Shown in pieces: positions 2 to 56,871 of a stretch of 64,000 nt of DNA; position 1 is the first letter of the stretch; every line of letters starts with the position of its first letter. The position numbers and the translations under genes are program-made. The notes below the pieces were generated by a model that was not told the origin of the DNA, ran no database searches, and saw only the letters and a program-made list of their open reading frames with translations. The stretch lies in the sequence record MK250021.1. One strand, written 5' to 3'.

Positions 2-3000
2 GGTTAGTTGTATGGTAATAATTATTTATATGTTTCTATCAGTGATTATATAACTAATAATGTTATTTTATCTGGATATTATAATCCAGATGATAAACAA
101 TTACATAAGGATATACAAGAATTAAAATACCAATATTTTTTTAGTAAAATATATTTTGGTAATATTATATTAAGTAAATTTACGATATATTCAAGATATT
201 AGGATTTTACAAAATTTATAAATGAAACTGATAAGTCTATTAAACCGAATATACCAAATGATAGTGACTATAGATATAAAGTAGCACATATAACAATTCG
301 TTCTGTTACGGATGAAAAAGAATTATCGGAAATAAAACAATATTTACCTAGTAATGAATTAATATGGGTAGAAGAAACGAGAACATTATGGATTAAAACT
401 AAAAATAAAGTTATACAAATTGGTGGCAATGGTTCATCAAGTGGTGATGACGATAATAAAGATAATATGACAAAAGAAGAATTAATAACAGCTCTACAAG
501 AAATGGGTATTATTTATGAATCTGACAATGGATTAGAATTATAGCAAGCAAAAGTAGAAGATATTACTTTTGTAAATTCTAATTTATCAGAAAAATATGT
601 ATATTCATTAGATTCCGAAGGAAATTTACATTCATCAGTTATTCCAGAAACAACTTTGAAAAATAGAATTGATGACTCTAATTTATATGATAATAATACA
701 ACGGTTGGAAGTAAAATGAATATCCGTGGATTTGTAGCGAATCTTGTATGTAAAGAACATGGCAAAGATGCAAATTCAACTGGTGCAATTATGGATGAAA
801 CAGACCGTATTCATATTTCTCAATTCTATGCGCCATTATCAACGGATATTGAAGAAGGAAAAATAGGATGTTCACATGCATTCATTGAATTGACAAATAC
901 ATCAAAATACGATTTTCAATTAGATGGATGTTATTTGCATTTCTTTAGTTTAAGCGATCAATCAAAAGAAACATATTATAAATTAGCGTTATCTGGAGTA
1001 ATACCTGCAGGAAATACTTTCTTAATCAGGGGGAAAAAATATATAGATTATAAAAATTCAAATGTATTTATAAAAGTAGAATCATATGATTAGGAATGGT
1101 TTACTGATAAAGATACATTAATAGATTTAACAGTAAACGTATCTTATAAAGCATATGGATTAGCTTTAACATATGGAGATACCGTAAATGGTGAATCCAT
1201 TACGCCTACAACAATATTAGCAAAAACGGATACATCAAAAACATGTTTATATGTTGATAATTATATAGATGGTATTTTATATTCTATTTCGGCAGCAAAT
1301 ATACCAGAATCGCATAGAAGATGGGCGATATATCAAGCGGGATATAATGTTCAATCAAATAGTTTATTTAGAGAAACATTTTTGTTAGATCCTGCAAAAC
1401 AAGGTTTTCAAGCATTACAATCAGCATGTAAAGATACTTCAAGATCAAGACATGCAAAAGATACTGACTTTACAATGTTATCATTGGCAAATGAATTTAT
1501 AGAATTCCCTAAATCTTATAATATAAAAGCAGTATCAGATTATACTCCAAAAGCATCTTATGAACATAAAACAGTTATTACTGAAAAATCAAATATTGAT
1601 TTAAATAAACCAAATATGATTACATGTGCATTTGGTATAGATATGTTAAAAACAAGATGTTTTAACTGGATTTCTGGTGGTATATTTGATGAATTCATTT
1701 GGATAAGAGAAAAAGGTACATCAGAATGGTAGTGTAGATATGAATCGTATACAAGTTCTAAATGCTCTATATAGACAGAAAAAATAAATGAAAGTATTAC
1801 AAAGAAAACTTTTGATGAAACCGATCAAAAATAGAAAGAAGTTAAACAATATATTTATGATAGAATAACCGGAATATTTCCTGGTACAAAAACACAATAT
1901 ACTGCGCATAAAGTAATAATAAATTTACCAACTCCTTCTTCTAGTACTAAAGTATATGAATATTGTGTAGGGCGTTCATTATTAAATGGTAACCCTGATC
2001 CAAATCATAGTAATCTTAATAATTTATATACATTTACAATGTATGCAAATACATATATTCCAAGATTATATCAAACAAGTGATCAACAAGGGTTTCATTG
2101 GATAGAATATTAGGTATGGACCGGTGCGGCGATAAAAATAAATGAATATATAAACAATACAAAATCTGATAAATATATACCTGTATTAGTAAATACTGGT
2201 GATATGACTCAATCTGGTTCTCGTATTTCGGAATGGTATGATTATTATGAAGCTGGTAAATGTTTATTTGATCATCTTGAACAAATGTATGTTGTTGGTA
2301 ATAACGACCTTGCAAATATAGATCCTACTATTTTAGGAACAGGAGATGATGCAGGTAAATCAAATTCATTCTATTTCCATGTATTTTATTGTTATGAAGT
2401 TGATGATTTTAGTGGAACAGATTATCCTATTGTTAATAAAAAATATATTCCATCATTATATTATTTTGGTACATCTGATTATAGGTTTATAATGATTAAT
2501 TCTGAAATCACATCAACATGCGCAAATTAGTGGTTTGATTTAGGCGATTATAATATATACACCGGTTATACAATTGGTTCTGGAAATAATACATATAAAA
2601 GTGATTCAAATTGGACACCAATTTATGATAGATTATTTGCTATTATGAATAATTTTAATGGTAAACAATTTATTACAGCATGTCATGAAATGCCATTTAC
2701 AGTTATTACAAAAGCAAATATTAAAAAATCTTCGGATATATTAATCGCTCAAAGAAGTGCTTCTGGAACATCTCTTGTAGGTTCTCATTTAAATTCTATA
2801 ACTGCATCTGACACAGGATATGGATTTAATTGGTTCTCTCGTTTACTTGAATATTTTGCGAATAAAAATAAGACAAAATTATGTATTGGCGGACATAAAC
2901 ATACATATGCTATGACATTCCCTATTCGGGAAAACTATACATATACAGAAGGTGGTATATAGAAATATTCTAAAGATGGACCAATGAGTATGTCTTCAAC

Positions 3001-3577
3001 TCTTAATAATGATATAGAAAAATCCGTAACATGGGTAAGAAAAATGAAATATGATGAAGACAAATGTATATATACAGAAAACAATAATGGAGAAAATGTA
3101 AATACAAGTAAATTACCATATATACCAAAAGAAGTATATAGTATGAATTATGATGCGACTACAACAATTGCAGCAGCTTCAAAAACATTGGGTGGATTTT
3201 TACCTTATCAATATTTAAGTACATTAACAAATCAAAATGCTATAACATATTTAATGTGTCAAGCAACAGGATATAAGTATTCATCTAATAAAGAATTACC
3301 TGCATATACATAGGCTTTTTCTGAACTTATACCTTAGACGACCGCTAATGAAAAACCAGCGGCTTCATAGAAGTATCCTATGTTCATAGATATTATGTTA
3401 AATGATACAACTATTAGTTTTAAATTAATAATGGTAGATAATATTTTTGGTGATAAGCAAATATTTACATAGAAAATATATGGAACAAAGTCAAGTGAAT
3501 TAAAATATATGCAGTTATAGAATAATTCATTATATGGAGAATGGGTTTCTAATGATACAAATCTTAAATCATTATAA
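2..3577 (+). CDS. Large protein (5'-truncated, >1190 aa) with lamin-tail domain (LTD), FN3-like purple acid phosphatase N-domain and calcineurin-like metallophosphoesterase domain
   Basis: Track fragments 8, 656, 1382, 2204, 2645 and 2984 share one frame, are separated only by TAG (~15) and end at TAA 3575-3577. LTD-like FIELTN...LSGVIPAGNTFLIRG; phosphoesterase motifs SDQQ, GDMTQ, GNND, CHEMP, GGHKHTY. Confidence 0.85.
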
Positions 3578-3606
3578 TTATAAATTAAAAATAAAATGTT
3601 AATATT

Positions 3607-6600
3607 ATGAAATTAAATGGAGTTGATAATATTATTACAGATAAAGATATTATTGTTACTACTGGATGATCCAGTAGTAACAAATCTTTAGCAACTGTAA
3701 TTGAATCACAATAGGAAAATATAGATGAACTTAAATCTAATGTTAAATGGATCTACAAATATGGTGGTGTTGGATCTGGTTCTGGTGGTGGCGGTTCAAA
3801 TTCTCAAGGAACATGGAAAGCAATAATTAATGTAAATAATAAAAGTGTGAAAAATAATGATAAGCTTGATTTATCAGGAAGTATAGTAAGTGGTGCTGTT
3901 ACAGCAACAGTAAATGTAAGCATATCTAATCCATCTAGTGGTGGATATAGATTTATATTATATTATTCATATGATGGAAATGATTATCAATAGTATTCAA
4001 CTCCTTTAATTCCAGATAATATGTTTACAGCTGCATTTACAGTAAGATTAACACAGAATAATGATTTAAATATTAAAATAACTGATATTGAAAATTCAAC
4101 TACTGTATATAAAATAACATATTTTATATATGGATATACATGTAATATTCAACCATTATATATAAATGATGATAATAATGAAATTTTAATTACATCTAAT
4201 AATTTTAAACCTGGATTATATAAAAATGGTATAATATTTAGGGTAAGTATAAAAAACTATGCATAGTTCACTATTAATTATAATTCATTAAATACAATGA
4301 ATTATACAATATATAAAATTAACAAGAAAAGTCCAGATAGTTATCAATCAACTATATCTGATTCATAGTCTTATTATTTAAAAGATGAATATAGAGGCTT
4401 TATACATAGAGATACAACGGAAGTTATATTAGATTATTTAATTTCATATTCAGATTTAGTAAATGAATTAAATTACGGTAATCATTTATTTACTATTAAT
4501 CTAGATGTTTTATCTGGATCATCAGGTGAAACTACAAAAACACAGTATACATATGAATATACAGATACTCCAGATACATAGAAATATATTATATGTTTAC
4601 CAGCAACTGATGCAGGTACTATATATACAGAAGACCCATCATCTATTGCTATTAATGAATTAGAGGAATCTGCATTTTTTATAGGAAATAAAGTTACATT
4701 AAAGTTTAGGCCTTTTAATTATTCTGCAAATGAAATTTAGATTTCATATAAATTAGAGAATAAACATAATCCGAATAATATAATTACATAGACTAGTACT
4801 TTTAGTATTTAGAATGGACGTTATACAACATAGAGTTTTGATGTATATGAAGGTATTAATAAATTAATTATTAATGATACTATTATACGTTATTATTATG
4901 GTAAAAAACTTAATGCTTCTATATCTTGGTATAATAAAAACAAGCTTGGCGATACATTCGGTAATATTTCAAAAAATGATTGGATTAAAAATTCATTTTT
5001 TAGATTTAAATTAGATTTATCAGAAAATTTAAGTTCAATTGAATTATTAAAGACTGCAAATAAAAATGGTTTTATTCAATTTTTTAAGAATAATAATACA
5101 AAGAAAACAATAATAGACCTTTGGGGTAATAATATTAAAGATAAAGAACAAATATTTACATCTGATAAAAAAAATGATATGCATTTTGCTATAGGCTTTT
5201 AGTATTCTTATTCAAATGATATAAATGATTATTTATTTTCACTAAAGGATAATGAGAATAATACAATATTTACTATATATTAGAATAATATTACATATGA
5301 CCATTTTTTATCTCATGGAACAGCAAATATTTATATACCAAATACAGTGAATTTTTCATCAGGTAATAATGACGAATATCATTTGTTGGATATTTATATA
5401 CGTAAGTTAAATCCCATGATAATACCAACATCTAATCCAAATAATCCTGAAAAAATGGATGATATAGAATATAATATATGGGAAATATCAAATTCAGTAA
5501 CAACTAAAAATGATTAGGAATTATATTATGTTGAATTCTATATTGATGGTATAGCAGATGGTATAATACAATATTTTTCAGTATCATTTCCATATATAAG
5601 ATATATAGAATTTAATAATATTAATATATATTATAATTTATTAGAATTGGCATATATAAATAATAGTAATTTACATTTTACAGATGTAGATGTTGTAATG
5701 TATTGGTATTCATATAAATTATAGTTGACAGAGGACAAAGGTATTAGTGATACAAATAAAAAACTTATTACATCATTATCTAATATTGAAGCACGTACAG
5801 CAGATGCTACAGTATCAAATAAAAGTTTATCTTATAAACATAATTTATTAAAAATAGATGAAAACTATTTAAAATAGATTACTTTAAATTCTTATTTACC
5901 AATATATATATTTAATGTTAGACATTTAAATTCAGATGATCAAGGAAATACTATATTTTTGTGGATTAATAAGCAATATAAGGAGACTGGTGAACATATG
6001 ACTAGTTGGCCCATTGCATCATCTACAAATGAAGATGGCACTGAACATTATACAGGTATTTCTTATATAGCACCTGGTAGTAATAATGAAGTAAAAATAA
6101 AATTTCCAAAAGATAATAATACAACAACAACTTGGGATTAGGCACAATTTAAACTAGATATTCAAGGTTCATCAACAAGAGGAAATCATGGTAAAAACTT
6201 AACATTAGGATTAAATAAGTTATAGGATACTACATTTTTATTTTCTCCGAATTTTAAAAATGATGATTCAGATACATATTTACCTGAAGAGGAATTTACT
6301 TTAAAAGCAGATATTGTAGACTCTGGACATTCAAATAATACTGTAATGGGTAAATTTATAAATGATAATACTACTAAATTTGAAACATATAGTAAAGGAA
6401 AATATACAAATTATATTAAGAATTGTTTGGAAGGCTTTCCTTGTATTATTATTTTAAATGTTGACTATGAAGTTTCAGGAACATAGAATGAATATTATTT
6501 CTTAGGAATTTATAATTTTAACTTAGGACGTGGTTCATATTCAAACTTAGGTTATAGAGACATTTCTGTATTTGATGACGGATTAAAATCAGTGTCTGAT

Positions 6601-47707: not shown

Positions 47708-47741
47708 AGTTATATTATTTTTTAATTAAACATTCTATTAA

Positions 47742-47775
47742 TACAAAGATACATAAAATTATTAAAAATAAAAAA
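47742..47775 (-). promoter_or_regulatory. Bacteroidota sigmaA-type (early) promoter
   Basis: ATGTATCTTTGTA with upstream T-run. Confidence 0.75.
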
Positions 47776-47816
47776 TAGTAATTAAGAAAACTAATATTAA
47801 ATTTCTTAATTACTAT
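47770..47816 (-). terminator. Intrinsic terminator
   Basis: 15-bp stem ATAGTAATTAAGAAA/TTTCTTAATTACTAT with T-run on the - strand. Confidence 0.7.
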
Positions 47817-47825
47817 ATATTTTAA

Positions 47826-48032
47826 TTACTTTGATGACGAGCTAGATGATGATGGAAATAATAATTTAGCAACTGTCATCAAACACAATGCATGAATATA
47901 TGTAATTGTTGGTAAACCAAATAAATATGGCATAACATAATTCCAACAAATCATAAATATAATTGCACCTAAAATAATAAATATAATTGCAACTAAAATA
48001 GTTACAATTGATGTCCATATAAAAGTTTTCAT
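47826..48032 (-). CDS. Small membrane protein (two hydrophobic helices)
   Basis: 68 aa, strongly hydrophobic. Confidence 0.7.
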   Translation of the reverse strand: MKTFIWTSIVTILVAIIFIILGAIIFMICWNYVMPYLFGLPTITYIHALCLMTVAKLLFPSSSSSSSK

Positions 48033-48128
48033 ATAATTTATTTACTTGTAATTAATGCAAATAGAATATTTGATAATACATTAAATCTAAACTTCTTTTT
48101 TGCATATCTACCTTTATTTTTTATTTGT

Positions 48129-48353: not shown

Positions 48354-48390
48354 AGTATATTTTATAAAGATATTTTATTTTCAAAATAAT

Positions 48391-48460
48391 AAAAAATAAA
48401 CATCAAAATTGTGGTTCTAAATCTTACTGCTACTTACTAAGACTACAATTTTGATGTTTA
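48391..48460 (-). terminator. Intrinsic terminator closing ncRNA candidate A
   Basis: 16-bp stem TAAACATCAAAATTGT/ACAATTTTGATGTTTA followed by TTTTTT on the - strand. Confidence 0.75.
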
Positions 48461-49134
48461 TAAAAGCAATCATTCATTATCCTGCAGCATCCATATTAGT
48501 ATAAGTTTCATTGCAATAGAACTTTACAACTATAGTGATAATCCACTTATACATTCTTTTACTCTAAAGTCTTTTATATAACTTTATCATACATAATATA
48601 TGTACTGTCCATCAATAAAAGGTTCTTTATTTCATCATGGTTTTATATCGTATAAACAACCCTCTGTATATCACTGATTCATTTCTTTACATTTAGAAAT
48701 CAGGGTCTTTAAGCCTCAACGTTTGGCTGTAACTATTATCCTCAACCATTACCAGATAATGTCATCTTGTTTTTGTGGTGCATCTCACATACCTCCTTTA
48801 ATCATAAAACAAGCAAAACTACTAAGACAAATAACGTTTCTTAGAACTTCTACGAATTTACGCTCATATCAAATCATCATCTGATATAGACACCTAAATT
48901 AAGTGAATAAAGTTTACGACTCAATATAAAATTTTATATCTCAACCTTTATCAAAAACGATTCATTAAATTCTTTTAAGGAACTTATTTCTAATTAAATG
49001 AAGGATTCATTTAAAATAGGTTCTCCCGAAAACATGCGGTTTATCCTTACTCATTATAATTATAATAAGCGTTGTTTATAGCACTCATTAGAATTCATTA
49101 TGTATTATCTAACTCTCATTTATAATATTCATAA

Positions 49135-49163
49135 TTTATATGATATTAAAAGCAAAATGTCTA
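49135..49163 (-). promoter_or_regulatory. Possible second, sigma70-type promoter TAGACA-N17-TATAAA
   Basis: Same 17-nt architecture as 38750, 54852 and 54968; lies inside a hairpin. Confidence 0.35.
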
Positions 49164-49241
49164 ATATCATATTATAAATTATTTGTCTCGTTAGATATTA
49201 TCAAAATTTCAAAGATCTCTTCATTGTTATTTTATTAACAA

Positions 49242-49275
49242 TACAAAGATACACATTCTTTTTTAATAAAAAAAA
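49242..49275 (-). promoter_or_regulatory. Bacteroidota sigmaA-type (early) promoter
   Basis: GTGTATCTTTGTA with upstream T-run; points into the ORF-free region A. Confidence 0.7.
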
Positions 49276-49303
49276 TATTCTAAGAAAAAATTAAAAATAT
49301 TTT

Positions 49304-50117: not shown

Positions 50118-51059
50118 TTACATTGTTCCATCATTAGGTTGCAAACACATAATTCCACGTTCTCGCCACATCTTAACCACTTTAGAAGAATCTTCCAATA
50201 CAAACAATACATTATAATAAGGTTCAATATATTCCTTATATAAATTATATTTACAATCTGGACCCTTTGTAAAATTCTTCAAAGGTCTCATTAACACCTT
50301 ATCAACATTACCAATAAGGTTATTCTTCAACCAATCTTCTGTTGCATGTCTAATATCGTCTGTATCTTCTCTACCTGTCAATATAATGACATCCACTGAT
50401 TTATCGGCAATATATGTATTAACAAGTTGGCAAAGTTGCTTACATGGTTTATCATCCCTCATGCTATCAGCAGCACCATTACCATAAAATGGCCGACCTT
50501 GAAGATTAAAACAAAGTGTAGCATCCATATCTACAAGAATACAATTCTTCTTCGTTTCATCAAACTTCTTAAAGCTATTATATTGCTTATTATTAAGTTG
50601 TGTAGCAATAAAGTTTCTATATCGCCTATAAGTAGATTTGATAACGGATTCACCTATAGGATTAGATCTAAATGAATCTCTTCTAATACATTCCTCTACC
50701 GATACATCAAAGAAATCCTTAAATTCCAATGTATAATGATACTCATTATGTGTCTCATTATACTTATCAATTCTATCTTGCATTTCTTTCCATCCCTTTG
50801 GATTCAGGTTCATATTATCCATAATGATATTCCAACCTTTTTCCATAGGTGATTTAAAAAATGCATCTGTCATATCTTTAATAACAGAAAGTTTCTCACG
50901 TGATTCTACCCAATACTCACCGAACATGTTTCTAAGAGAATCCCAATTAATTCTAATTCTCTCAGTTGGTTTCTCCTTTACCCAATGTTCAGCGAATGTA
51001 GACTTACCAGACGCTTGAATACCTCTTGTCAATATAATTACCCTTTCTTTCATATTCAT
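50118..51059 (-). CDS. pseT: Polynucleotide 5'-kinase/3'-phosphatase (T4 PseT-like)
   Basis: P-loop GIQASGKST, RINWDSLR; HAD motifs LVDMDATL, LTGR, RP...D...K, LEDS. Confidence 0.9.
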   Translation of the reverse strand: MNMKERVIILTRGIQASGKSTFAEHWVKEKPTERIRINWDSLRNMFGEYWVESREKLSVIKDMTDAFFKSPMEKGWNIIMDNMNLNPKGWKEMQDRIDKYNETHNEYHYTLEFKDFFDVSVEECIRRDSFRSNPIGESVIKSTYRRYRNFIATQLNNKQYNSFKKFDETKKNCILVDMDATLCFNLQGRPFYGNGAADSMRDDKPCKQLCQLVNTYIADKSVDVIILTGREDTDDIRHATEDWLKNNLIGNVDKVLMRPLKNFTKGPDCKYNLYKEYIEPYYNVLFVLEDSSKVVKMWRERGIMCLQPNDGTM

Positions 51060-51451: not shown

Positions 51452-52147
51452 TTATTTAGATTTTAATCCTAAACAATATTCTTTATTAATATTATCAATA
51501 AAAGAATTAATTCTAATTCTTAGTAATTCTGATTCTTCTTCAAATTCCTTAATTTTATCAATGTCTTTTTTAATATCATCTATATTATGATTTAACAAAT
51601 ATTCATACGTATTAGGTTTAGATACTTTAAAATAATAAATATCTTCATTCATAATATTATTATGATTTAAAGCACATAATAAATGATAAGATTCCTCATT
51701 TGCAGATGAACCATGATAACCATATCCATCACTTTCAAAATATATACATAATGGTCCATAACTATAATGTCCACCTGGATATACAGTTGTTCTTAATGAG
51801 TTAATATGAAATGATTTACATATATTATATTTCTTATCTAAATAATCATTCAATAACTTATTAATACTCATCATTTGAAGATCTAATAATCTATCTAAAT
51901 TTATATCATTATTCTTACTTATATATACACTGGAAACTTCTTTTACAACTGAATCAATATCTAATTCATAATTCTCGTCTGTATATAAATGAAGAATACA
52001 AAGAAATAATCTATGTATATATTCTTTCTTATCGTAATTTATATATGCAGTTTTTAATTTTTCTACATAATCATCTGTCACCTTCTTATTGATGTTATAT
52101 TCGATATTCTTTATAAATTCTTTTTGCTCATTCTATGTCATAATCAT
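51452..52147 (-). CDS. Hypothetical protein (231 aa)
   Basis: The track GTG start extends through one TAG (codon 5) to ATG 52147, which forms an ATGA overlap with the upstream stop. Confidence 0.7.
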
Positions 52148-52341
52148 TGCTCTTTTATTTTTCTTAAAATAAATTTAGGTTCTTGATAATAAAAATAATC
52201 TATTGTTTTATCATCTATAATGTTCAAATTATATAATGCTTGTGAAAACCTAATATCCTTATATGTCGTAAGATACTTCTTTAATATATCTAATATTTCC
52301 ATATTAGCATTGTATCTCTCAAATGTTTCTTTAGTTTCCAT
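52144..52341 (-). CDS. Hypothetical protein
   Basis: Intact ORF with overlapping start/stop at both ends. Confidence 0.65.
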   Translation of the reverse strand: METKETFERYNANMEILDILKKYLTTYKDIRFSQALYNLNIIDDKTIDYFYYQEPKFILRKIKEQ

Positions 52342-52739
52342 TAGAATAACGGATTAATTTTTATCTCGTTTGTTTTACTATATTCTTGTACATCTAAATT
52401 CAATGTTTCATTTAGCCAATCAGCAATTAAATGTCTGTGACAAAATTCATCTGGTTTTTCAAAACAACATAAAGCACAATCTTTATTACCTGTTATAAAC
52501 TTTAATCTATCTATAAATAAAGTTGGTTCTTTAAATATAGATAAAACTTCAGCTTTATATCGTTTTCTAAACTCTTGATGATTGCTTCTACAATTATTCA
52601 ATATATCTGGTGTAGGTGCGATACTTGCTAAGTTAACCCCTTTGAAATCATTTGGCGGATAACAACACACACCTATAGGAATAATATTATTCTTTATAAG
52701 ATTATTAATATTACCAAAATAGCTTGTATATATTTTCAT
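52341..52739 (-). CDS. DUF488-like protein
   Basis: MKIYTSYF..., APT, LCCFEKPDEFCHRHLIADWL. Confidence 0.65.
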   Translation of the reverse strand: MKIYTSYFGNINNLIKNNIIPIGVCCYPPNDFKGVNLASIAPTPDILNNCRSNHQEFRKRYKAEVLSIFKEPTLFIDRLKFITGNKDCALCCFEKPDEFCHRHLIADWLNETLNLDVQEYSKTNEIKINPLF

Positions 52740-52948
52740 ACACGAAATAAACTATATATTTCATTATAAGTTTCTTTTGATATTGGATATGATACTATAT
52801 TACAATATTCTCCGAAATTCTGATCAACATCTACCATATAACCTTGTTTATATGTATCATAATAGCATCTTACTATATGTGAAACATTAACTAAACCTGA
52901 ATATGTATCAATAAATTTATTATAATTTTTATTTTTTAACTTAATCAT
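52736..52948 (-). CDS. Hypothetical protein (70 aa)
   Basis: Start reassigned to ATG 52948, because the longer track ORF overlaps the + strand gene at 53008. Confidence 0.55.
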   Translation of the reverse strand: MIKLKNKNYNKFIDTYSGLVNVSHIVRCYYDTYKQGYMVDVDQNFGEYCNIVSYPISKETYNEIYSLFRV

Positions 52949-53007
52949 AATACTAAAACTATATAACTTAATGTTTATATAATATATAAATGTTTTTGTT
53001 TTATTTA

Positions 53008-53331
53008 ATGGGAGGTTTTGTTTATTTAATTTGCGATCCTGAATAGAATTGTTATAAAATAGGTGTAACAAGGAATATAGCATAGAATAGATTAAAGTAG
53101 TTATAGACTGGTAACTCATCAAAATTACATATGGTTTCAAATATATATTGTGAATATCCTTTTAGACTTGAAACAATGTTACATAATAAATTCAATCATA
53201 AACGTGCAAATGGTGAATGGTTCTATTTAGAATAGGAAGATATAAGTAATTTTAAAACTATATGTGAAGAAACAATATAGATGATTAATGTAATGAAAGA
53301 TAATCCATTCTTTAGTAAAGATTTAAAATGA
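53008..53331 (+). CDS. GIY-YIG-superfamily T5orf172/MUG113-like protein (107 aa), absent from track
   Basis: With TAG=Gln: GFVYLI...YKIGVT...RLKQLQTGN...E..LH..F...R.NGEWF; 6 in-frame TAG; TGA stop then terminator. Confidence 0.8.
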
Positions 53332-53376
53332 ATAAAGGTGATATAAGAATAATAAAACTTATATCACCTTTATTTT
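53331..53376. terminator. Bidirectional intrinsic terminator
   Basis: 17-bp stem AATAAAGGTGATATAAG/CTTATATCACCTTTATT between convergent genes. Confidence 0.85.
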
Positions 53377-53651
53377 TAATTATCGTTCTTTTCTAATTCC
53401 TTATTAATATAATCCATATCTTCATCTGTTAAATCGCCAAATGATGTGAATAAATCTTTATTAATAAGTCCATATCTCATAAGATATGCTAATGTCATTC
53501 TTACAGCATAATCTGCAATATCATAAGTTGTTGTAACTTCTAAATTTTGTAAATCTGGATTATTACCAACTACATTAGAAACTTTATCAACAATCTTATC
53601 ACATGTTTTTTTCATTGAATTTAATTCATTATTTGTTAATTTGGTACTCAT
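53376..53651 (-). CDS. Hypothetical protein (91 aa)
   Basis: Start reassigned to MSTKL (ATG 53651), since the longer track start runs into the terminator at 53715. Confidence 0.6.
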   Translation of the reverse strand: MSTKLTNNELNSMKKTCDKIVDKVSNVVGNNPDLQNLEVTTTYDIADYAVRMTLAYLMRYGLINKDLFTSFGDLTDEDMDYINKELEKNDN

Positions 53652-53706
53652 AATATCATTAAATAATTTAATTATTATATTACAACGATATGCATAAAGT
53701 TTAGAA

Positions 53707-53749
53707 ATAAAAAATGAGTTATTAGACTTATGCACAATCTAATAACTCA
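53707..53749 (-). terminator. Intrinsic terminator closing ncRNA candidate B
   Basis: 12-bp stem TGAGTTATTAGA/TCTAATAACTCA plus T-run on the - strand. Confidence 0.75.
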
Positions 53750-54815
53750 CAAACACTTTATTCTAAATTTATTATATTTACATCTTATTTAAAGATGTCC
53801 CTCATGTTGTTATTCGTACGAACATAAGTTTCTGCCTCTTATGATTCACTTTAACGTTTGCCCGTTATATAATGAATGTTCATACTGAACTTCGTTATGT
53901 CCATAAGGACAAATGGCTGAGAACTTGACCAACACCTACTCTCAATGCTGTAACGTTGGAGTTACATGTTCACACAACTCTTATTTCTAAGAGGTTGAGA
54001 GCATACCCACGACTTTTGTAAAAAATCGTAAACTCTTACTTGATAGGTTTCATAGAAATTCATTTCATACCAACTTCCTTGGAAGGATTCAATGTGTCCC
54101 CACATTTAGCACGATACTACTCTTACTATTCTCATGTCTTTCCTTGCGGTACTCGAATCATGTCTACATATTACAGTAGAATAAGGGTATTTTAACCACC
54201 AAGTGTCGCACACTTTTGCTTATACATAATTATATGTTAAATAAAATAATTTCCAATATTATTATTCTTATTATATATTCTTTAGACTTGAAAGACGAGG
54301 TGCGACCAATAGCATTTCTTCCTTTTGAGAAGAACCCACTAAATCGCCTTTCTGAAATTTCGTTACACCAATGTAACCATATTTCTACTCTTATAACTTA
54401 CCTATTGTTTTTCAATAGTAATCTTACCATTTCTGAACAAGTTACCAGCTTGTATAAATTATTTGGTTTATAATTTATATAAGATTCATTATAACAATTA
54501 ATATTAGCACTGGGAATTGGTATTCCGATCACTAAATATCCATAAACTTAAACTTCTATTGTATTACTACTCACATCAGTTGTCTATCAAACTTCCAATG
54601 TATATAAACTTCATCTCAGGAATTATCCCATCAATTTCCCATTTATACAGGCACTTACTAAGTTTGGTTTTCTGTAGAATGCTCATTATTCATAAACATC
54701 GATAAACATGTCTACTGTTTACCTTTATCACATCACTGCTTTATCCTTACCCCACCGAAACCATGGGTTTATATTTCAAAGAACTCATCTTGAATAAAAT
54801 AAATTCATTCAAATT
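53707..54815 (-). ncRNA. Candidate long structured ncRNA B (~1.1 kb, possibly two modules)
   Basis: No credible ORF and visibly more G+C than the flanks. GNRA-capped hairpins on the - strand (GCGA 54201-54215, GGGA 54091-54106, GAAA 53978-53993). Tandem promoters, boxA-like GTTCTTTGAAAT and a terminator. Confidence 0.55.
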
Positions 54816-54823
54816 TTATACTT

Positions 54824-54852
54824 ATTATATAATCAATAATTTAAAAAGTCTA
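54824..54852 (-). promoter_or_regulatory. Sigma70-type promoter TAGACT-N17-TATAAT
   Basis: Exact 17-nt spacing; points into region B. Confidence 0.6.
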
Positions 54853-54939
54853 TATTTTAATAGATATATTTCAAAATTTTTATTGTTAACTGTTATTAAA
54901 AATATTAAATATTAAAATCTTTTTAAACTTGATTCTAAA

Positions 54940-54968
54940 TTTATATATTAAATTAAATAGAAAGTCTA
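54940..54968 (-). promoter_or_regulatory. Sigma70-type promoter TAGACT-N17-TATAAA
   Basis: Tandem copy 116 nt upstream of the previous one. Confidence 0.55.
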
Positions 54969-54994
54969 TATTTCAATACAATATTTTTAAAAAA

Positions 54995-55171
54995 TTATTT
55001 TAAACAATATTCTAAATCAAATATAAAGTCTCCTAATAGTTCAATCTTTTTCCTAATAAGTTCTGATTCTAAATCAAATTTATGATCTATACAAAAATTT
55101 AATTCAATATATAACTTATCTCTATTAGATTTCCATTTATCTATTAATTCTTTCTTTGTTAATTTTTCCAT
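54995..55171 (-). CDS. Small hypothetical protein (58 aa), absent from track
   Basis: MEKLTKEELIDKW...; ATG lies 1 nt from the upstream stop. Confidence 0.55.
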   Translation of the reverse strand: MEKLTKKELIDKWKSNRDKLYIELNFCIDHKFDLESELIRKKIELLGDFIFDLEYCLK

Positions 55172-55172
55172 C

Positions 55173-55673
55173 TTAAAAATTCATTATATTTACACCAGCA
55201 ATAGAAAGAAATTTTATATTCTTAATAATTTCACATGCTTTATCTTCTGGAAATATAATTTTAAAATCATCATAAACATCCATTACTTCTTGCCATTTAC
55301 ATTCATCTCTTGGTGCTTCCATAGAAGTATATATTTTAGCAATAAGCATTCTTTTTTTAAATTGATTATAAAACGTACTTCTTGGATACATCCCATGTTC
55401 ATATCCTCCATTTGGATGATGTCCCATCCAATCAGGTTCAATATAATGACTCCATTTTACTCCTTCAAAATATAAAGTCTTATCTGGTTTTACACTAATA
55501 GAAATACTTTTATTTTTATCTTTTTGATATTCTATAAATTCAAGAAAATTATTTAATGCATCAAGATATTTCTCTGCATATTCTGCTTCTTCTTTTTTAT
55601 CAAAAATATAACTAAAACCAAAAGTATTATCTACAACTTCATATTTTACTTTTGTCTCAATCTTATTAATCAT
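55173..55673 (-). CDS. Hypothetical protein
   Basis: Track ORF; start probably MINKIETK (55673) or MINYK (55697). Confidence 0.65.
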   Translation of the reverse strand: MINKIETKVKYEVVDNTFGFSYIFDKKEEAEYAEKYLDALNNFLEFIEYQKDKNKSISISVKPDKTLYFEGVKWSHYIEPDWMGHHPNGGYEHGMYPRSTFYNQFKKRMLIAKIYTSMEAPRDECKWQEVMDVYDDFKIIFPEDKACEIIKNIKFLSIAGVNIMNF

Positions 55674-55689
55674 ATTATTATTTTTATAA

Positions 55690-55842
55690 TTAATCATTTT
55701 CTCCCCATGGTAATTCACTATCTGGATCTATTACATCACCACCATGATTACCATCTACATTAAAACCTGATTGAAAATTACTCATAATATTCATGTCAAC
55801 AGGAATAACATTAATATTTGGTTTTATATAATTCTTTTTCAT
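55690..55842 (-). CDS. Small peptide with MKKxYxKP leader-like N-terminus (50 aa), absent from track
   Basis: MKKNYIKPNINVIPVDMNIMSNFQSGFNVDGNHGGDVIDPDSELPWGEND; fills the gap between flanking genes. Confidence 0.6.
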   Translation of the reverse strand: MKKNYIKPNINVIPVDMNIMSNFQSGFNVDGNHGGDVIDPDSELPWGEND

Positions 55843-55885
55843 ATTAAAATTCTTCAACTCGTTATTCAAATAATGTTTTCTAAAA

Positions 55886-56164
55886 TTATTTAACTGTTAC
55901 TTTAATTTTAGATTCTGTTACCTTTCCATTAACTACAGTATTTATAGTATCAATAGAAATAGAATCCAAACTCTTAATGAATACATTAGGAATTTTTTCT
56001 ATAGTAATTAAACTATCTCTATATTGAATAGAATCTTTACTCAAATTAATTGTATCATGTATAGGTTCTTGATTCAAACTAGGAATATGTTTATTAATCC
56101 AAAAATATTGAACAGCAATACCAATAATAATTCCAATAATAAATGTCCAAAAAATATGTTTCAT
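55886..56164 (-). CDS. Single-pass membrane protein with D(S/T)(I/L) motifs
   Basis: N-terminal TM helix, then DTI, DSI, DSL, DSI, DTI. Confidence 0.65.
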   Translation of the reverse strand: MKHIFWTFIIGIIIGIAVQYFWINKHIPSLNQEPIHDTINLSKDSIQYRDSLITIEKIPNVFIKSLDSISIDTINTVVNGKVTESKIKVTVK

Positions 56165-56188
56165 TTTTCTATATTATTTAAAATAAAA

Positions 56189-56395
56189 TTAAACTTTTAA
56201 ATTAACTAAATCTTTATACTTTATTTCTTTATACTTTGTTTTATTAATAGATATAAAAATAGGCTTATCAGTATAACTTTTATAATAATTTAACGATTCG
56301 TCTTTACTAATAAACCACTTTGTTTCTTTATCTAAAATTTTTCCAGATAAACTTCTTCCTAATCCTATCCGAATAATAATATTATTTTTCAACAT
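56189..56395 (-). CDS. Hypothetical protein
   Basis: Intact ORF. Confidence 0.55.
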   Translation of the reverse strand: MLKNNIIIRIGLGRSLSGKILDKETKWFISKDESLNYYKSYTDKPIFISINKTKYKEIKYKDLVNLKV

Positions 56396-56437
56396 AATTA
56401 AAAATAATTTTTCAAAAAGAAATTTATAAATTAATTA

Positions 56438-56871
56438 NNNNNNNNNNNNNNNNNNNNNNNNNNNNNNNNNNNNNNNNNNNNNNNNNNNNNNNNNNNNNNN
56501 NNNNNNNNNNNNNNNNNNNNNNNNNNNNNNNNNNNNNNNNNNNNNNNNNNNNNNNNNNNNNNNNNNNNNNNNNNNNNNNNNNNNNNNNNNNNNNNNNNNN
56601 NNNNNNNNNNNNNNNNNNNNNNNNNNNNNNNNNNNNNNNNNNNNNNNNNNNNNNNNNNNNNNNNNNNNNNNNNNNNNNNNNNNNNNNNNNNNNNNNNNNN
56701 NNNNNNNNNNNNNNNNNNNNNNNNNNNNNNNNNNNNNNNNNNNNNNNNNNNNNNNNNNNNNNNNNNNNNNNNNNNNNNNNNNNNNNNNNNNNNNNNNNNN
56801 NNNNNNNNNNNNNNNNNNNNNNNNNNNNNNNNNNNNNNNNNNNNNNNNNNNNNNNNNNNNNNNNNNNNNNN
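56438..56871. other. Assembly gap (434 N)
   Basis: Run of N. Confidence 1.

What the first reader, a model, noticed from the sequence alone, without database searches (positions are those of the whole stretch)
53707..54815. Candidate large structured ncRNA B (~1.1 kb) rich in GNRA-capped helices
The region is ORF-free and visibly GC-enriched, lying between tandem sigma70-type promoters with boxA-like GTTCTTTGAAAT (54773-54784) and a terminator (53707-53749). The - strand shows stems closed by GNRA loops (AAGTGT-GCGA-CACTT, AATGTG-GGGA-CACATT, CTCTTA-GAAA-TAAGAG, CC-GCAA-GG) and a nested junction (CTCTCAA...TTGAGAG enclosing two hairpins). Many more stems are present (GTTACA-TTGG-TGTAAC, GGAAT-ACCA-ATTCC, ACATCTT..AAGATGT). 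GNRA loops on one strand indicate a functional folded RNA and fix its orientation. An AT-rich spacer (~54230-54280) may separate two modules. No known family was recognised; this is the strongest candidate for an undescribed system in the window.
Basis: partly seen in the sequence, partly recalled or inferred. Interest (0 to 1): 0.85.

Follow-up and report, generated by a model that had tools for sequence, protein, structure and literature searches.

The report
Divergent GOLLD-type RNA in Lak megaphage
The ORF-free stretch encodes a real, abundantly expressed RNA of about 1 kb in Lak megaphages of gut Prevotella; it is not a new class but a very divergent relative of the phage GOLLD RNAs, which are known to self-assemble into RNA-only cages.

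Summary
Window 53707-54815 has no credible ORF under table 11, table 4 or the Lak phage code (TAG=Q). It is richer in G+C than the window (0.33 against 0.255). On the - strand it folds better than shuffles (z -3.0 and -2.6). Its helices keep pairing through compensatory changes across four Lak-like lineages. The window is Prevotella megaphage Lak-B. In four metatranscriptome studies, assembled contigs lie on 53830-54799 only, at word depths of 30-4900 against 0-11 on the flanking genes.

The claim that no known family fits is wrong. Rfam's GOLLD model (RF02032) aligns over its full length (positions 1-416) to 53914-54352 (-). It scores 62.8 bits (E 7.5e-16) here, and 67.8 and 70.0 bits in two other lineages. 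All three are far below the curated cut-off of 150 bits, and the match appears only when short stretches are searched.

The layout matches GOLLD:
- a more variable 5' domain of about 445 nt;
- a hairpin with a CAAAA loop;
- a conserved 3' core.

A Lak-specific tail of about 100 nt follows.

Best reading: a divergent GOLLD-class RNA that probably self-assembles during infection. Its function, like GOLLD's, is unknown.

The parts
54810..54855 (-). Promoter region (identity open). It holds the repeated motif ATATAGACTTT (54855-54845), the best sigma70-like site TAGACT-17-TATAAT (54852-54824), and TAAAATTTG (54818-54810), which resembles the Bacteroidota -7 box.
   Evidence: Sigma70-like sites are not enriched over shuffles. 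RNA contigs reach 54799. The Bacteroidota -7 consensus TAnnTTTG is from my own knowledge.
54356..54800 (-). 5' domain of about 445 nt, specific to the Lak lineages. It has about 15 helices and is closed by UUUGAA (54780-54775) pairing with UUCAGA (54437-54432). It contains the invariant GTTCTTTGAAAT (54784-54773).
   Evidence: alifold gives 91 pairs, 98.8% canonical; 31 show compensatory changes against 0-5 in slid controls. Identity to Lak-C1 is 86%. z-score -3.03. RNA contigs cover it.
54290..54352 (-). First hairpin of the GOLLD 3' region (Rfam model positions 1-57). It has an invariant UCAAAAG loop (54328-54322) and an internal loop GUCGCAC (54306-54300).
   Evidence: alignment. Stem covariation UA/AU and CG/GC at two pairs. 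The loop is invariant in 15 sequences.
54223..54289 (-). It aligns to the variable linker of the GOLLD model (positions about 58-136).
   Evidence: It is replaced by other sequence in relatives (58 letters skipped, 68 between) and is poorly conserved. No tRNA in it.
53914..54222 (-). Conserved GOLLD-type 3' core. It runs from AAGCAAAAGU and a long-range helix (54204-54196 with 54047-54038), through the hairpins capped GCAA, GGGA and GAAA and the junction GCUCUC/GAGAGU, to the terminal ..UCUCAGCC hairpin.
   Evidence: RF02032 aligned 1-416 at 53914-54352: 62.8 bits, E 7.5e-16. 94% identical between Lak-B and Lak-C1. Hairpins covary. Two pseudoknot-type pairings covary with a true GOLLD.
53815..53913 (-). 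Lak-specific 3' tail beyond the end of the GOLLD model, with small hairpins (GUCC/GGAC, AACG/CGUU, CAUAAG/CUUAUG).
   Evidence: Conserved at 90%. Stems are kept with changed loops or pairs in the L019 lineage. RNA contigs end at about 53830.
53751..53814 (-). Non-conserved 3' linker, including the Lak-B-only hairpin at 53798-53780. It is probably not part of the abundant RNA.
   Evidence: Linker plus terminator (53814-53707) are 61% identical to Lak-C1. No RNA contigs lie here.
53704..53750 (-). Intrinsic terminator: a 15-pair stem followed by a T run.
   Evidence: Compensatory changes in Lak-A/C.

Best explanation
The locus is a gene for a noncoding RNA of about 970 nt on the - strand. The RNA runs from about 54800 to about 53815-53830 and is followed by an intrinsic terminator at 53750-53704. 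It belongs to Lak megaphages of Prevotella.

It is a very divergent member of the GOLLD class of phage RNAs. Its parts, in order, are:
- a lineage-specific 5' domain of about 445 nt;
- a hairpin with a conserved A-rich CAAAA loop;
- a disordered AU-rich linker;
- a conserved 3' core homologous to Rfam RF02032 positions 1-416;
- an extra tail of about 100 nt.

Shown here: the fold is conserved, the RNA is expressed, and it is related to GOLLD.

Inferred: like GOLLD env-38, which forms a protein-free 14-mer cage (PMC12286853), the RNA folds on its own and assembles into a homo-oligomeric shell in infected cells. On this reading the 5' domains form caps, the 3' cores form rings, and the linker faces inward. 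It would then act stoichiometrically, as a structure, rather than as a regulator. What such shells do is unknown for the whole class.
For: GOLLD homology:
- RF02032 aligns over its full length in three lineages that are 73-90% identical to one another. Scores are 62.8 bits (E 7.5e-16), 67.8 bits (E 4.1e-18) and 70.0 bits (E 5.7e-18).
- The one search hit was the only one among 55 scored candidates in a 553-kb Lak genome. None of 14 control genomes scored over the cut-off; one gave a sub-threshold match at E<=1.
- Two pairings that the model cannot score sit at model-equivalent positions and change sequence while staying complementary. One is GUCGCAC:GUGCGAC in Lak, GCACCG:CGGUGC in the true GOLLD of L033, and gcGgAG:CUucgu in the consensus. 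The other is UACCC:GGGUA in Lak, AGUCU:AGACU in L033, and gugaC:Gucac in the consensus.
- The sizes and order of the parts (about 445 nt, then a hairpin, a linker and a core of 442 nt in all) mirror env-38, with residues 1-420, 421-833 and linker 497-538 (PMC12286853).

Structure and strand:
- Covariation and z-scores.
- 16% of paired cells are G.U. Pairs are 98.8% canonical on the - strand and 83% on the + strand.

Noncoding. Substitutions show no 3-base periodicity.

Selection: the RNA is 86-94% identical between Lak-B and Lak-C1, against 64-79% for the flanking genes.

Expression: in four RNA studies contigs of 832-971 nt match the conserved block, at depths of 30-4900 against 0-11 on the flanks.

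Distribution: present in all 15 Lak genomes in the phage collection.
Against: - All scores are less than half of Rfam's gathering cut-off of 150 bits.
- A sequence-only profile of the Lak family does not find the GOLLD of L033.
- The middle of the core aligns at low posterior probability, with several non-canonical pairs.
- No tRNA lies within the 64-kb window, whereas GOLLD genes are often beside tRNA islands.
- The 5' domain was not shown to be related to any GOLLD 5' domain.
- Oligomerisation is pure inference. The extra tail and the different 5' domain could change or abolish assembly.
- Contigs cannot give the strand, exact ends or timing of expression.
- Covariation rests on only about four independent lineages.
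Confidence: 0.85

Rival explanations
1. It is a new class of large structured RNA unrelated to any known family. On this view the GOLLD match is convergence or a composition artefact.
For: No Rfam hit at gathering score or in a 2-kb scan. Scores are far below the cut-off. The LakB match carries a bias term of 17.6 bits. nhmmer sees no similarity to a true GOLLD. The 5' domain and the tail have no known counterpart.
Against: Three lineages give E-values of 1e-15 to 1e-18 over the full model, one with a bias of only 6.6 bits. There was a single hit per 553-kb AT-rich genome. The unscored pseudoknot pairings covary in register with GOLLD. The order of the parts is the same.
Confidence: 0.08
2. 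It is a long structured leader or cis-regulatory element of the downstream gene (53651-53376), or an antitermination cassette, as the 'boxA-like' label suggests.
For: It is on the same strand as the downstream gene. An invariant 12-mer lies near the 5' end. The terminator could act as an attenuator.
Against: RNA contigs stop at about 53830 and depth over the downstream gene is about 0-4. A strong terminator lies between the two. The RNA is far more conserved than the downstream gene: 86-94% against 64.5%. L019 has extra genes called between the RNA and the synteny block, so the adjacency may not be fixed.
Confidence: 0.04
3. It is a self-splicing intron, a ribozyme or a mobile-element RNA, perhaps linked to the nearby GIY-YIG/T5orf172 gene.
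For: It is rich in GNRA loops. A GIY-YIG-type gene lies 400 nt downstream on the other strand and is syntenic in L019.
Against: No group I or II intron or ribozyme family matched, even in the small-window scans. The RNA interrupts no gene. It has its own terminator. It sits at the same locus in all 15 Lak genomes, one copy per genome where checked.
Confidence: 0.02

Closest known systems
GOLLD RNA (Rfam RF02032; Weinberg et al. 2009; cryo-EM of env-38 in PMC12286853)
   Same: - Phage-encoded and longer than 800 nt.
- A more variable 5' domain of about 420-445 nt, followed by a hairpin with an A-rich CAAAA loop.
- A variable, unstructured linker.
- A conserved 3' core that is collinear with the whole Rfam model, including the long-range helix, the GNRA-capped hairpins, the junction enclosing a GAAA hairpin, and the terminal ..UCUCAGCC hairpin.
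- Two pseudoknot-type pairings in register.
- High abundance as RNA.
   Different: - Bit scores of 63-70 against the cut-off of 150. The match is undetectable by sequence alone or by a standard filtered scan.
- An extra conserved 3' tail of about 100 nt.
- The 5' domain has no demonstrated relative.
- No tRNA in the linker or within 64 kb.
- The carrier is a ~550-kb megaphage with TAG recoded, infecting Bacteroidota.
- Oligomeric state unknown.
ROOL RNA (Rfam RF03087)
   Same: A large, ornate, phage-encoded RNA that forms RNA-only cages, is very abundant and has no known function.
   Different: No match in any scan. In ROOL the 5' and 3' halves intertwine (PMC12286853), whereas here there are two separable domains.
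OLE, HEARO/IscB omega RNA, and group I/II introns
   Same: Large structured bacterial or phage RNAs with many GNRA loops.
   Different: No Rfam match. No partner genes (OapA, IscB, reverse transcriptase) beside it. It interrupts no gene.

Membership tests
GOLLD (RF02032) | Score at or above Rfam's curated gathering cut-off (150 bits) | tested here: not met
   62.8, 67.8 and 70.0 bits in three lineages. E-values are nevertheless 7.5e-16 to 5.7e-18.
GOLLD (RF02032) | Collinear match to the whole conserved 3' region | tested here: met
   Model positions 1-416 of 416 align, untruncated, in all three lineages. The middle part aligns at low posterior probability.
GOLLD (RF02032) | Helices and pseudoknots of the 3' region supported by covariation | tested here: inconclusive
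   The first hairpin, the long-range helix, and the GAAA, UCCAAC and UAC hairpins covary within the Lak family. Two unscored pairings covary between Lak, L033 and the consensus. Several central helices are invariant or poorly paired, only about four lineages are available, and I had no cmalign or R-scape.
GOLLD (RF02032) | Variable linker after the first 3'-region hairpin, sometimes holding a tRNA | tested here: met
   The AU-rich stretch 54289-54223 aligns to the model's linker and is replaced in relatives. It holds no tRNA.
GOLLD (RF02032) | Less conserved 5' domain of about 400 nt; total length over 800 nt | tested here: met
   The 5' domain is 445 nt and 86% identical, against 94% for the core. 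The transcript is about 970 nt. Homology of the 5' domain to known GOLLD 5' domains was not tested, because Rfam has no model for it.
GOLLD (RF02032) | Encoded by phages or prophages, often beside tRNA islands | tested here: inconclusive
   Phage-encoded: yes, in Lak megaphages. Beside tRNAs: no, there is none in the 64-kb window.
GOLLD (RF02032) | Protein-free homo-14-mer cage | not testable with these tools
   Needs in-vitro transcription followed by mass photometry or cryo-EM.
ROOL / OLE / group I and II introns / other Rfam families | Match to the family's covariance model | tested here: not met
   Nothing relevant at E<=10 or E<=1 in the scans of 2 kb, 771 nt and 501 nt.

The most novel reading that the evidence does not exclude
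Lak megaphages carry an enlarged, remodelled GOLLD. It has a new cap domain and an added tail, and it builds a cage of different size or symmetry. It may work together with the second ORF-free, terminator-ended stretch 5 kb away (48390-49260), which starts with the same ..TCTTTGAAAT element. More broadly, GOLLD-type RNAs could be much more widespread in gut phages of Bacteroidota than Rfam-threshold scans show, because the speed filters and the 150-bit cut-off hide them.
Probability: 0.3. Interest if true: 0.7.

Novelty: new variant of a known kind. Interest (0 to 1): 0.55.

Why it matters
GOLLD and ROOL are the only natural RNAs known to build closed, protein-free cages, and nobody knows what the cages are for.

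A divergent GOLLD in Lak megaphages matters for four reasons:
- It extends the class to one of the largest known phage types, to a Bacteroidota host and to the human and animal gut.
- It shows that the RNA is among the most abundant phage transcripts in real gut metatranscriptomes.
- It gives a natural 'mutant' with a different 5' domain, an added tail and no tRNA neighbourhood. This can show which parts of GOLLD are essential for assembly and whether the link to tRNAs is part of the function.
- It warns that standard Rfam annotation misses such relatives.

No paper in the searched library mentions GOLLD together with Lak phages, megaphages or Prevotella. The stored part of the published GOLLD alignment holds no Lak or Prevotella entry.

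Tried and rejected
- Rfam at gathering score on the whole window and at E<=10 on 2 kb gave nothing relevant. The GOLLD match appears only on stretches of 840 nt or less, where the filters are laxer.
- Protein-coding readings under TAG=Q and table 4 give no real ORF.
- Similarity between this RNA and the second ORF-free stretch ('candidate A') is no better than shuffles: score 34 against a mean of 27.9 and a maximum of 36.
- The 18-mer scan of viral contigs added four high-GC contigs that were chance matches.
- The search for related loci with the upstream 181-aa protein found only near-identical Lak-B loci.
- The 19-mer scan of metagenome contigs gave 21 unrelated contigs. Twenty are high-GC (0.55-0.70); the eight scanned had no Rfam hit, and they are probably coding. 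The remaining one, L033 (G+C 0.42), was the lead to GOLLD.
- Spurious ORFs lying on the RNA were used as handles to fetch divergent homologues. This worked for P0001, P0003 and P0004. The 47-aa frame gave only close copies.
- A sequence-only nhmmer profile of the Lak family does not reach L033's GOLLD.
- I did not build a covariance model of the 3' core. At about 320 positions it exceeds the tool's time forecast.
- I did not hand a long typed structure string to the count of structure pairs. Pair counts and slid-partner controls were done in Python instead.
- The genome search found no first-look candidates in the three GenBank Lak records that do hold the RNA. That blank is a limit of the tool, not evidence of absence.
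- I could not map the paper's named bridges (B6-B10, L20, J13/15) onto Lak positions without the figure.

Full report
**What the window is.** The stretch 53700-54830 is 100% identical to Prevotella phage Lak-B2 and related Lak-B genomes. It is about 90% identical to Lak-A1, Lak-A2 and Lak-C1, so it is present in all 15 Lak records of the phage collection. Lak phages read TAG as a sense codon. In this window ORFs of at least 70 aa cover 23741 aa with TAG=Q against 14310 aa with table 11. With TAG=Q almost every 'gap' closes, except 47708-48128, 48354-49303, the finding itself and an N run. I did not touch the N run at 56438-56871.

**Checking the observation.**
- No ORF of 60 aa or more exists under table 11 or table 4. 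Under TAG=Q only a 109-aa + strand frame opens, and it has no real relatives.
- Substitutions between lineages show no 3-base periodicity: 26/28/34 and 87/76/88.
- G+C is 0.326 against 0.255 for the window. The AT-rich spacer is 0.115.
- The terminator at 53750-53714 plus a T run is found by the scan (2 sites against 0.2 expected) and keeps its stem through compensatory changes in Lak-A/C.
- Sigma70-like sites are no more frequent than in shuffles: 13 against 12.8. An 11-mer, ATATAGACTTT, occurs twice upstream.
- Folding z-scores are -3.03 and -2.56 on the - strand and -1.36 and -1.16 on the + strand.

**Relatives and covariation.** Exact-word scans found only Lak-like contigs. The most divergent homologues came from spurious ORFs that gene callers had placed on the RNA. 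This gave four lineages:
- Lak-B;
- Lak-A/C and several metagenome variants;
- L048;
- L019, L049 and L050.

Identity between the lineages is 72-90%. L019 keeps the synteny of the RNA with a GIY-YIG gene and a DUF488 gene.

Consensus folding gives 91 pairs in the 5' domain. They are 98.8% canonical, and 31 show changes on both sides, against 0-5 when the 3' partners are slid by 1-3 columns. In the 3' domain there are 109 pairs, 13 of them compensatory against 0-3 in the controls. These structures were derived from the same alignment, so part of the excess is by construction, but the size of the excess is large.

G.U pairs make up 16% of paired cells. The same pairs would be only 83% canonical on the + strand, which fixes the orientation. 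Between Lak-B and Lak-C1 the RNA is 86% (5' domain), 94% (3' domain) and 90% (tail) identical. The flanking genes are 64-79% identical, and the 3' linker plus terminator are 61%.

**Expression.** Logan contigs of four RNA libraries from four studies (gut and pig-gut metatranscriptomes) were laid on 51500-56400.
- The contigs lie on 53830-54799 only.
- One 971-nt contig spans exactly that range. Others span 53915-54748 and 53868-54749.
- Word depth is 30-4900 on the RNA and 0-11 on the flanking genes, which argues against DNA carry-over.
- Contigs cannot give the strand or exact ends.
- The abundant species appears to end at about 53830, some 80-120 nt before the terminator. This suggests 3' trimming, which is an inference.
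- RNA runs of ten studies hold at least the conserved part.

**Identification.** A 19-mer from the core, TCGAGTACCGCAAGGAAAG, also occurred in an unrelated contig, L033. There it lies immediately 5' of a bona fide GOLLD RNA (162.7 bits) inside a tRNA island. That led me to rescan short stretches, where Infernal's filters are laxer. RF02032 then aligns to 53914-54352 (-) over model positions 1-416, at 62.8 bits and E 7.5e-16.

The same holds in two other lineages:
- An A/C-like 553-kb genome gives 67.8 bits and E 4.1e-18. It was the only hit among 55 scored candidates, and no control genome scored over the cut-off.
- The most divergent lineage, L049, gives 70.0 bits, E 5.7e-18 and a bias of 6.6 bits.

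All three scores are below Rfam's cut-off of 150 bits, and a sequence-only profile does not connect the two families.

There is independent support from two pairings that a covariance model cannot score, because they cross other helices. Both sit at model-equivalent positions and differ in sequence while staying complementary:
- GUCGCAC (54306-54300) with GUGCGAC (54211-54205) in Lak; GCACCG with CGGUGC in L033; gcGgAG with CUucgu in the consensus.
- UACCC (54189-54185) with GGGUA (54008-54004) in Lak; AGUCU with AGACU in L033; gugaC with Gucac in the consensus.

**Anatomy compared with GOLLD.** The cryo-EM paper (PMC12286853) describes GOLLD as follows:
- longer than 800 nt and phage-encoded, often near tRNA islands;
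- a less conserved 5' region (residues 1-420 in env-38) that forms the cap of a D7 14-mer cage;
- a universally conserved 3' region (421-833) that forms the ring;
- a disordered variable linker (497-538) facing the interior;
- conserved A-rich loops used in A-minor bridges;
- at least one pairing first seen as a covarying pseudoknot that turned out to be intermolecular.

The Lak RNA has a 445-nt 5' domain (54800-54356), a first hairpin with an invariant CAAAA loop (54352-54290), a 67-nt AU-rich linker (54289-54223), a core (54222-53914) and a further conserved tail (53913-53815). The true domain boundary lies one hairpin further 5'. It is invariant, so it may not form as drawn.

**Mechanism.**
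- Shown: a conserved fold, a noncoding nature, high RNA abundance, and homology to the GOLLD 3' region.
- Inferred: protein-free self-assembly into a shell during infection. The evidence is homology, the conserved A-rich loop and pseudoknot arms, and an abundance that fits a structural role.
- Unknown for the whole class: the cargo or purpose of the shells.

**Differences that could matter.** There is no tRNA in the 64 kb. There is an added tail. The 5' domain has no known relative. The carrier is a recoded megaphage.

**Novelty.** No paper in the library mentions GOLLD together with Lak phages, megaphages or Prevotella. The stored part of the published 806-sequence GOLLD alignment holds Bacteroides fragments but no Lak or Prevotella entry. 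That study used cmsearch on phage genomes with standard filters, which would probably drop this hit, as. I rate it a new variant of a known kind.

Noticed in passing
window 48390-49260 (- strand): A second ORF-free stretch of about 870 nt, probably the scan's 'candidate A'. It ends in a terminator-like hairpin at about 48450-48390. It begins with GATCTTTGAAAT (49217-49206), about 25 nt after a Bacteroidota-type -7 box TATCTTTG (49251-49244); RNA B starts with the same arrangement. It has no Rfam match even in a small-window scan and no sequence similarity to RNA B. It is 78% identical in Lak-A/C, and gut RNA runs hold small shares of its words.
   Followed up: partly
whole window: TAG is read as a sense codon (the Lak code). 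ORF coverage rises from 14310 to 23741 aa, and nearly all table-11 'gaps' close.
   Followed up: yes
window 52990-53331 (+): A GIY-YIG / T5orf172 / MUG113 gene lies on the opposite strand with six in-frame TAG codons. It is 68% identical in the distant relative L019, where it keeps its place downstream of the RNA.
   Followed up: partly
window 50118-51059 (-) and 52341-52739 (-): A polynucleotide kinase-phosphatase (AAA_33 plus HAD_PNKP, an RNA-repair type enzyme) and a DUF488 protein lie 1-3.5 kb downstream of the RNA. The other neighbours have no Pfam match.
   Followed up: no
window 54845-54855 and 54961-54971 (- strand): The 11-mer ATATAGACTTT occurs twice upstream of the RNA and nowhere else in the window (0.18 expected). 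It is conserved in Lak-A2 and Lak-C1 but not in Lak-A1. It may be a phage promoter element.
   Followed up: partly
L033 4560-5610 (+): A bona fide GOLLD RNA in a tRNA island of an unrelated contig (G+C 0.42), with a tRNA-like insert in its linker. It shares a 24-of-25-nt stretch (..TCGAGTACCGCAAGGAAAG) with the Lak RNA, but at a non-equivalent place, just 5' of the Rfam model start. This may be a recurrent GCAA-hairpin module.
   Followed up: partly
L020-L047 (20 high-GC contigs, many with soil-type names): The same 19-mer occurs exactly in 20 unrelated contigs with G+C 0.55-0.70. The eight that were scanned have no Rfam hit. It reads as a plausible high-GC coding word (..EYRKE..). I did not explain it further.
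   Followed up: no
L048 (JALFMW010000134.1, 2010 nt): A 2-kb contig filed in a 'Clostridium sp.' MAG carries a Lak-type RNA (80% identical, cut off at the contig end). It is probably a phage contig binned into the wrong genome.
   Followed up: no
window 56438-56871: A run of N. I left it untouched, and the reads were laid only up to 56400.
   Followed up: no
tools: The GOLLD match is lost by Infernal's speed filters on stretches of 2 kb or more and found on 840 nt or less. The genome search found no first-look candidates in three GenBank Lak records that do hold the RNA.
   Followed up: yes
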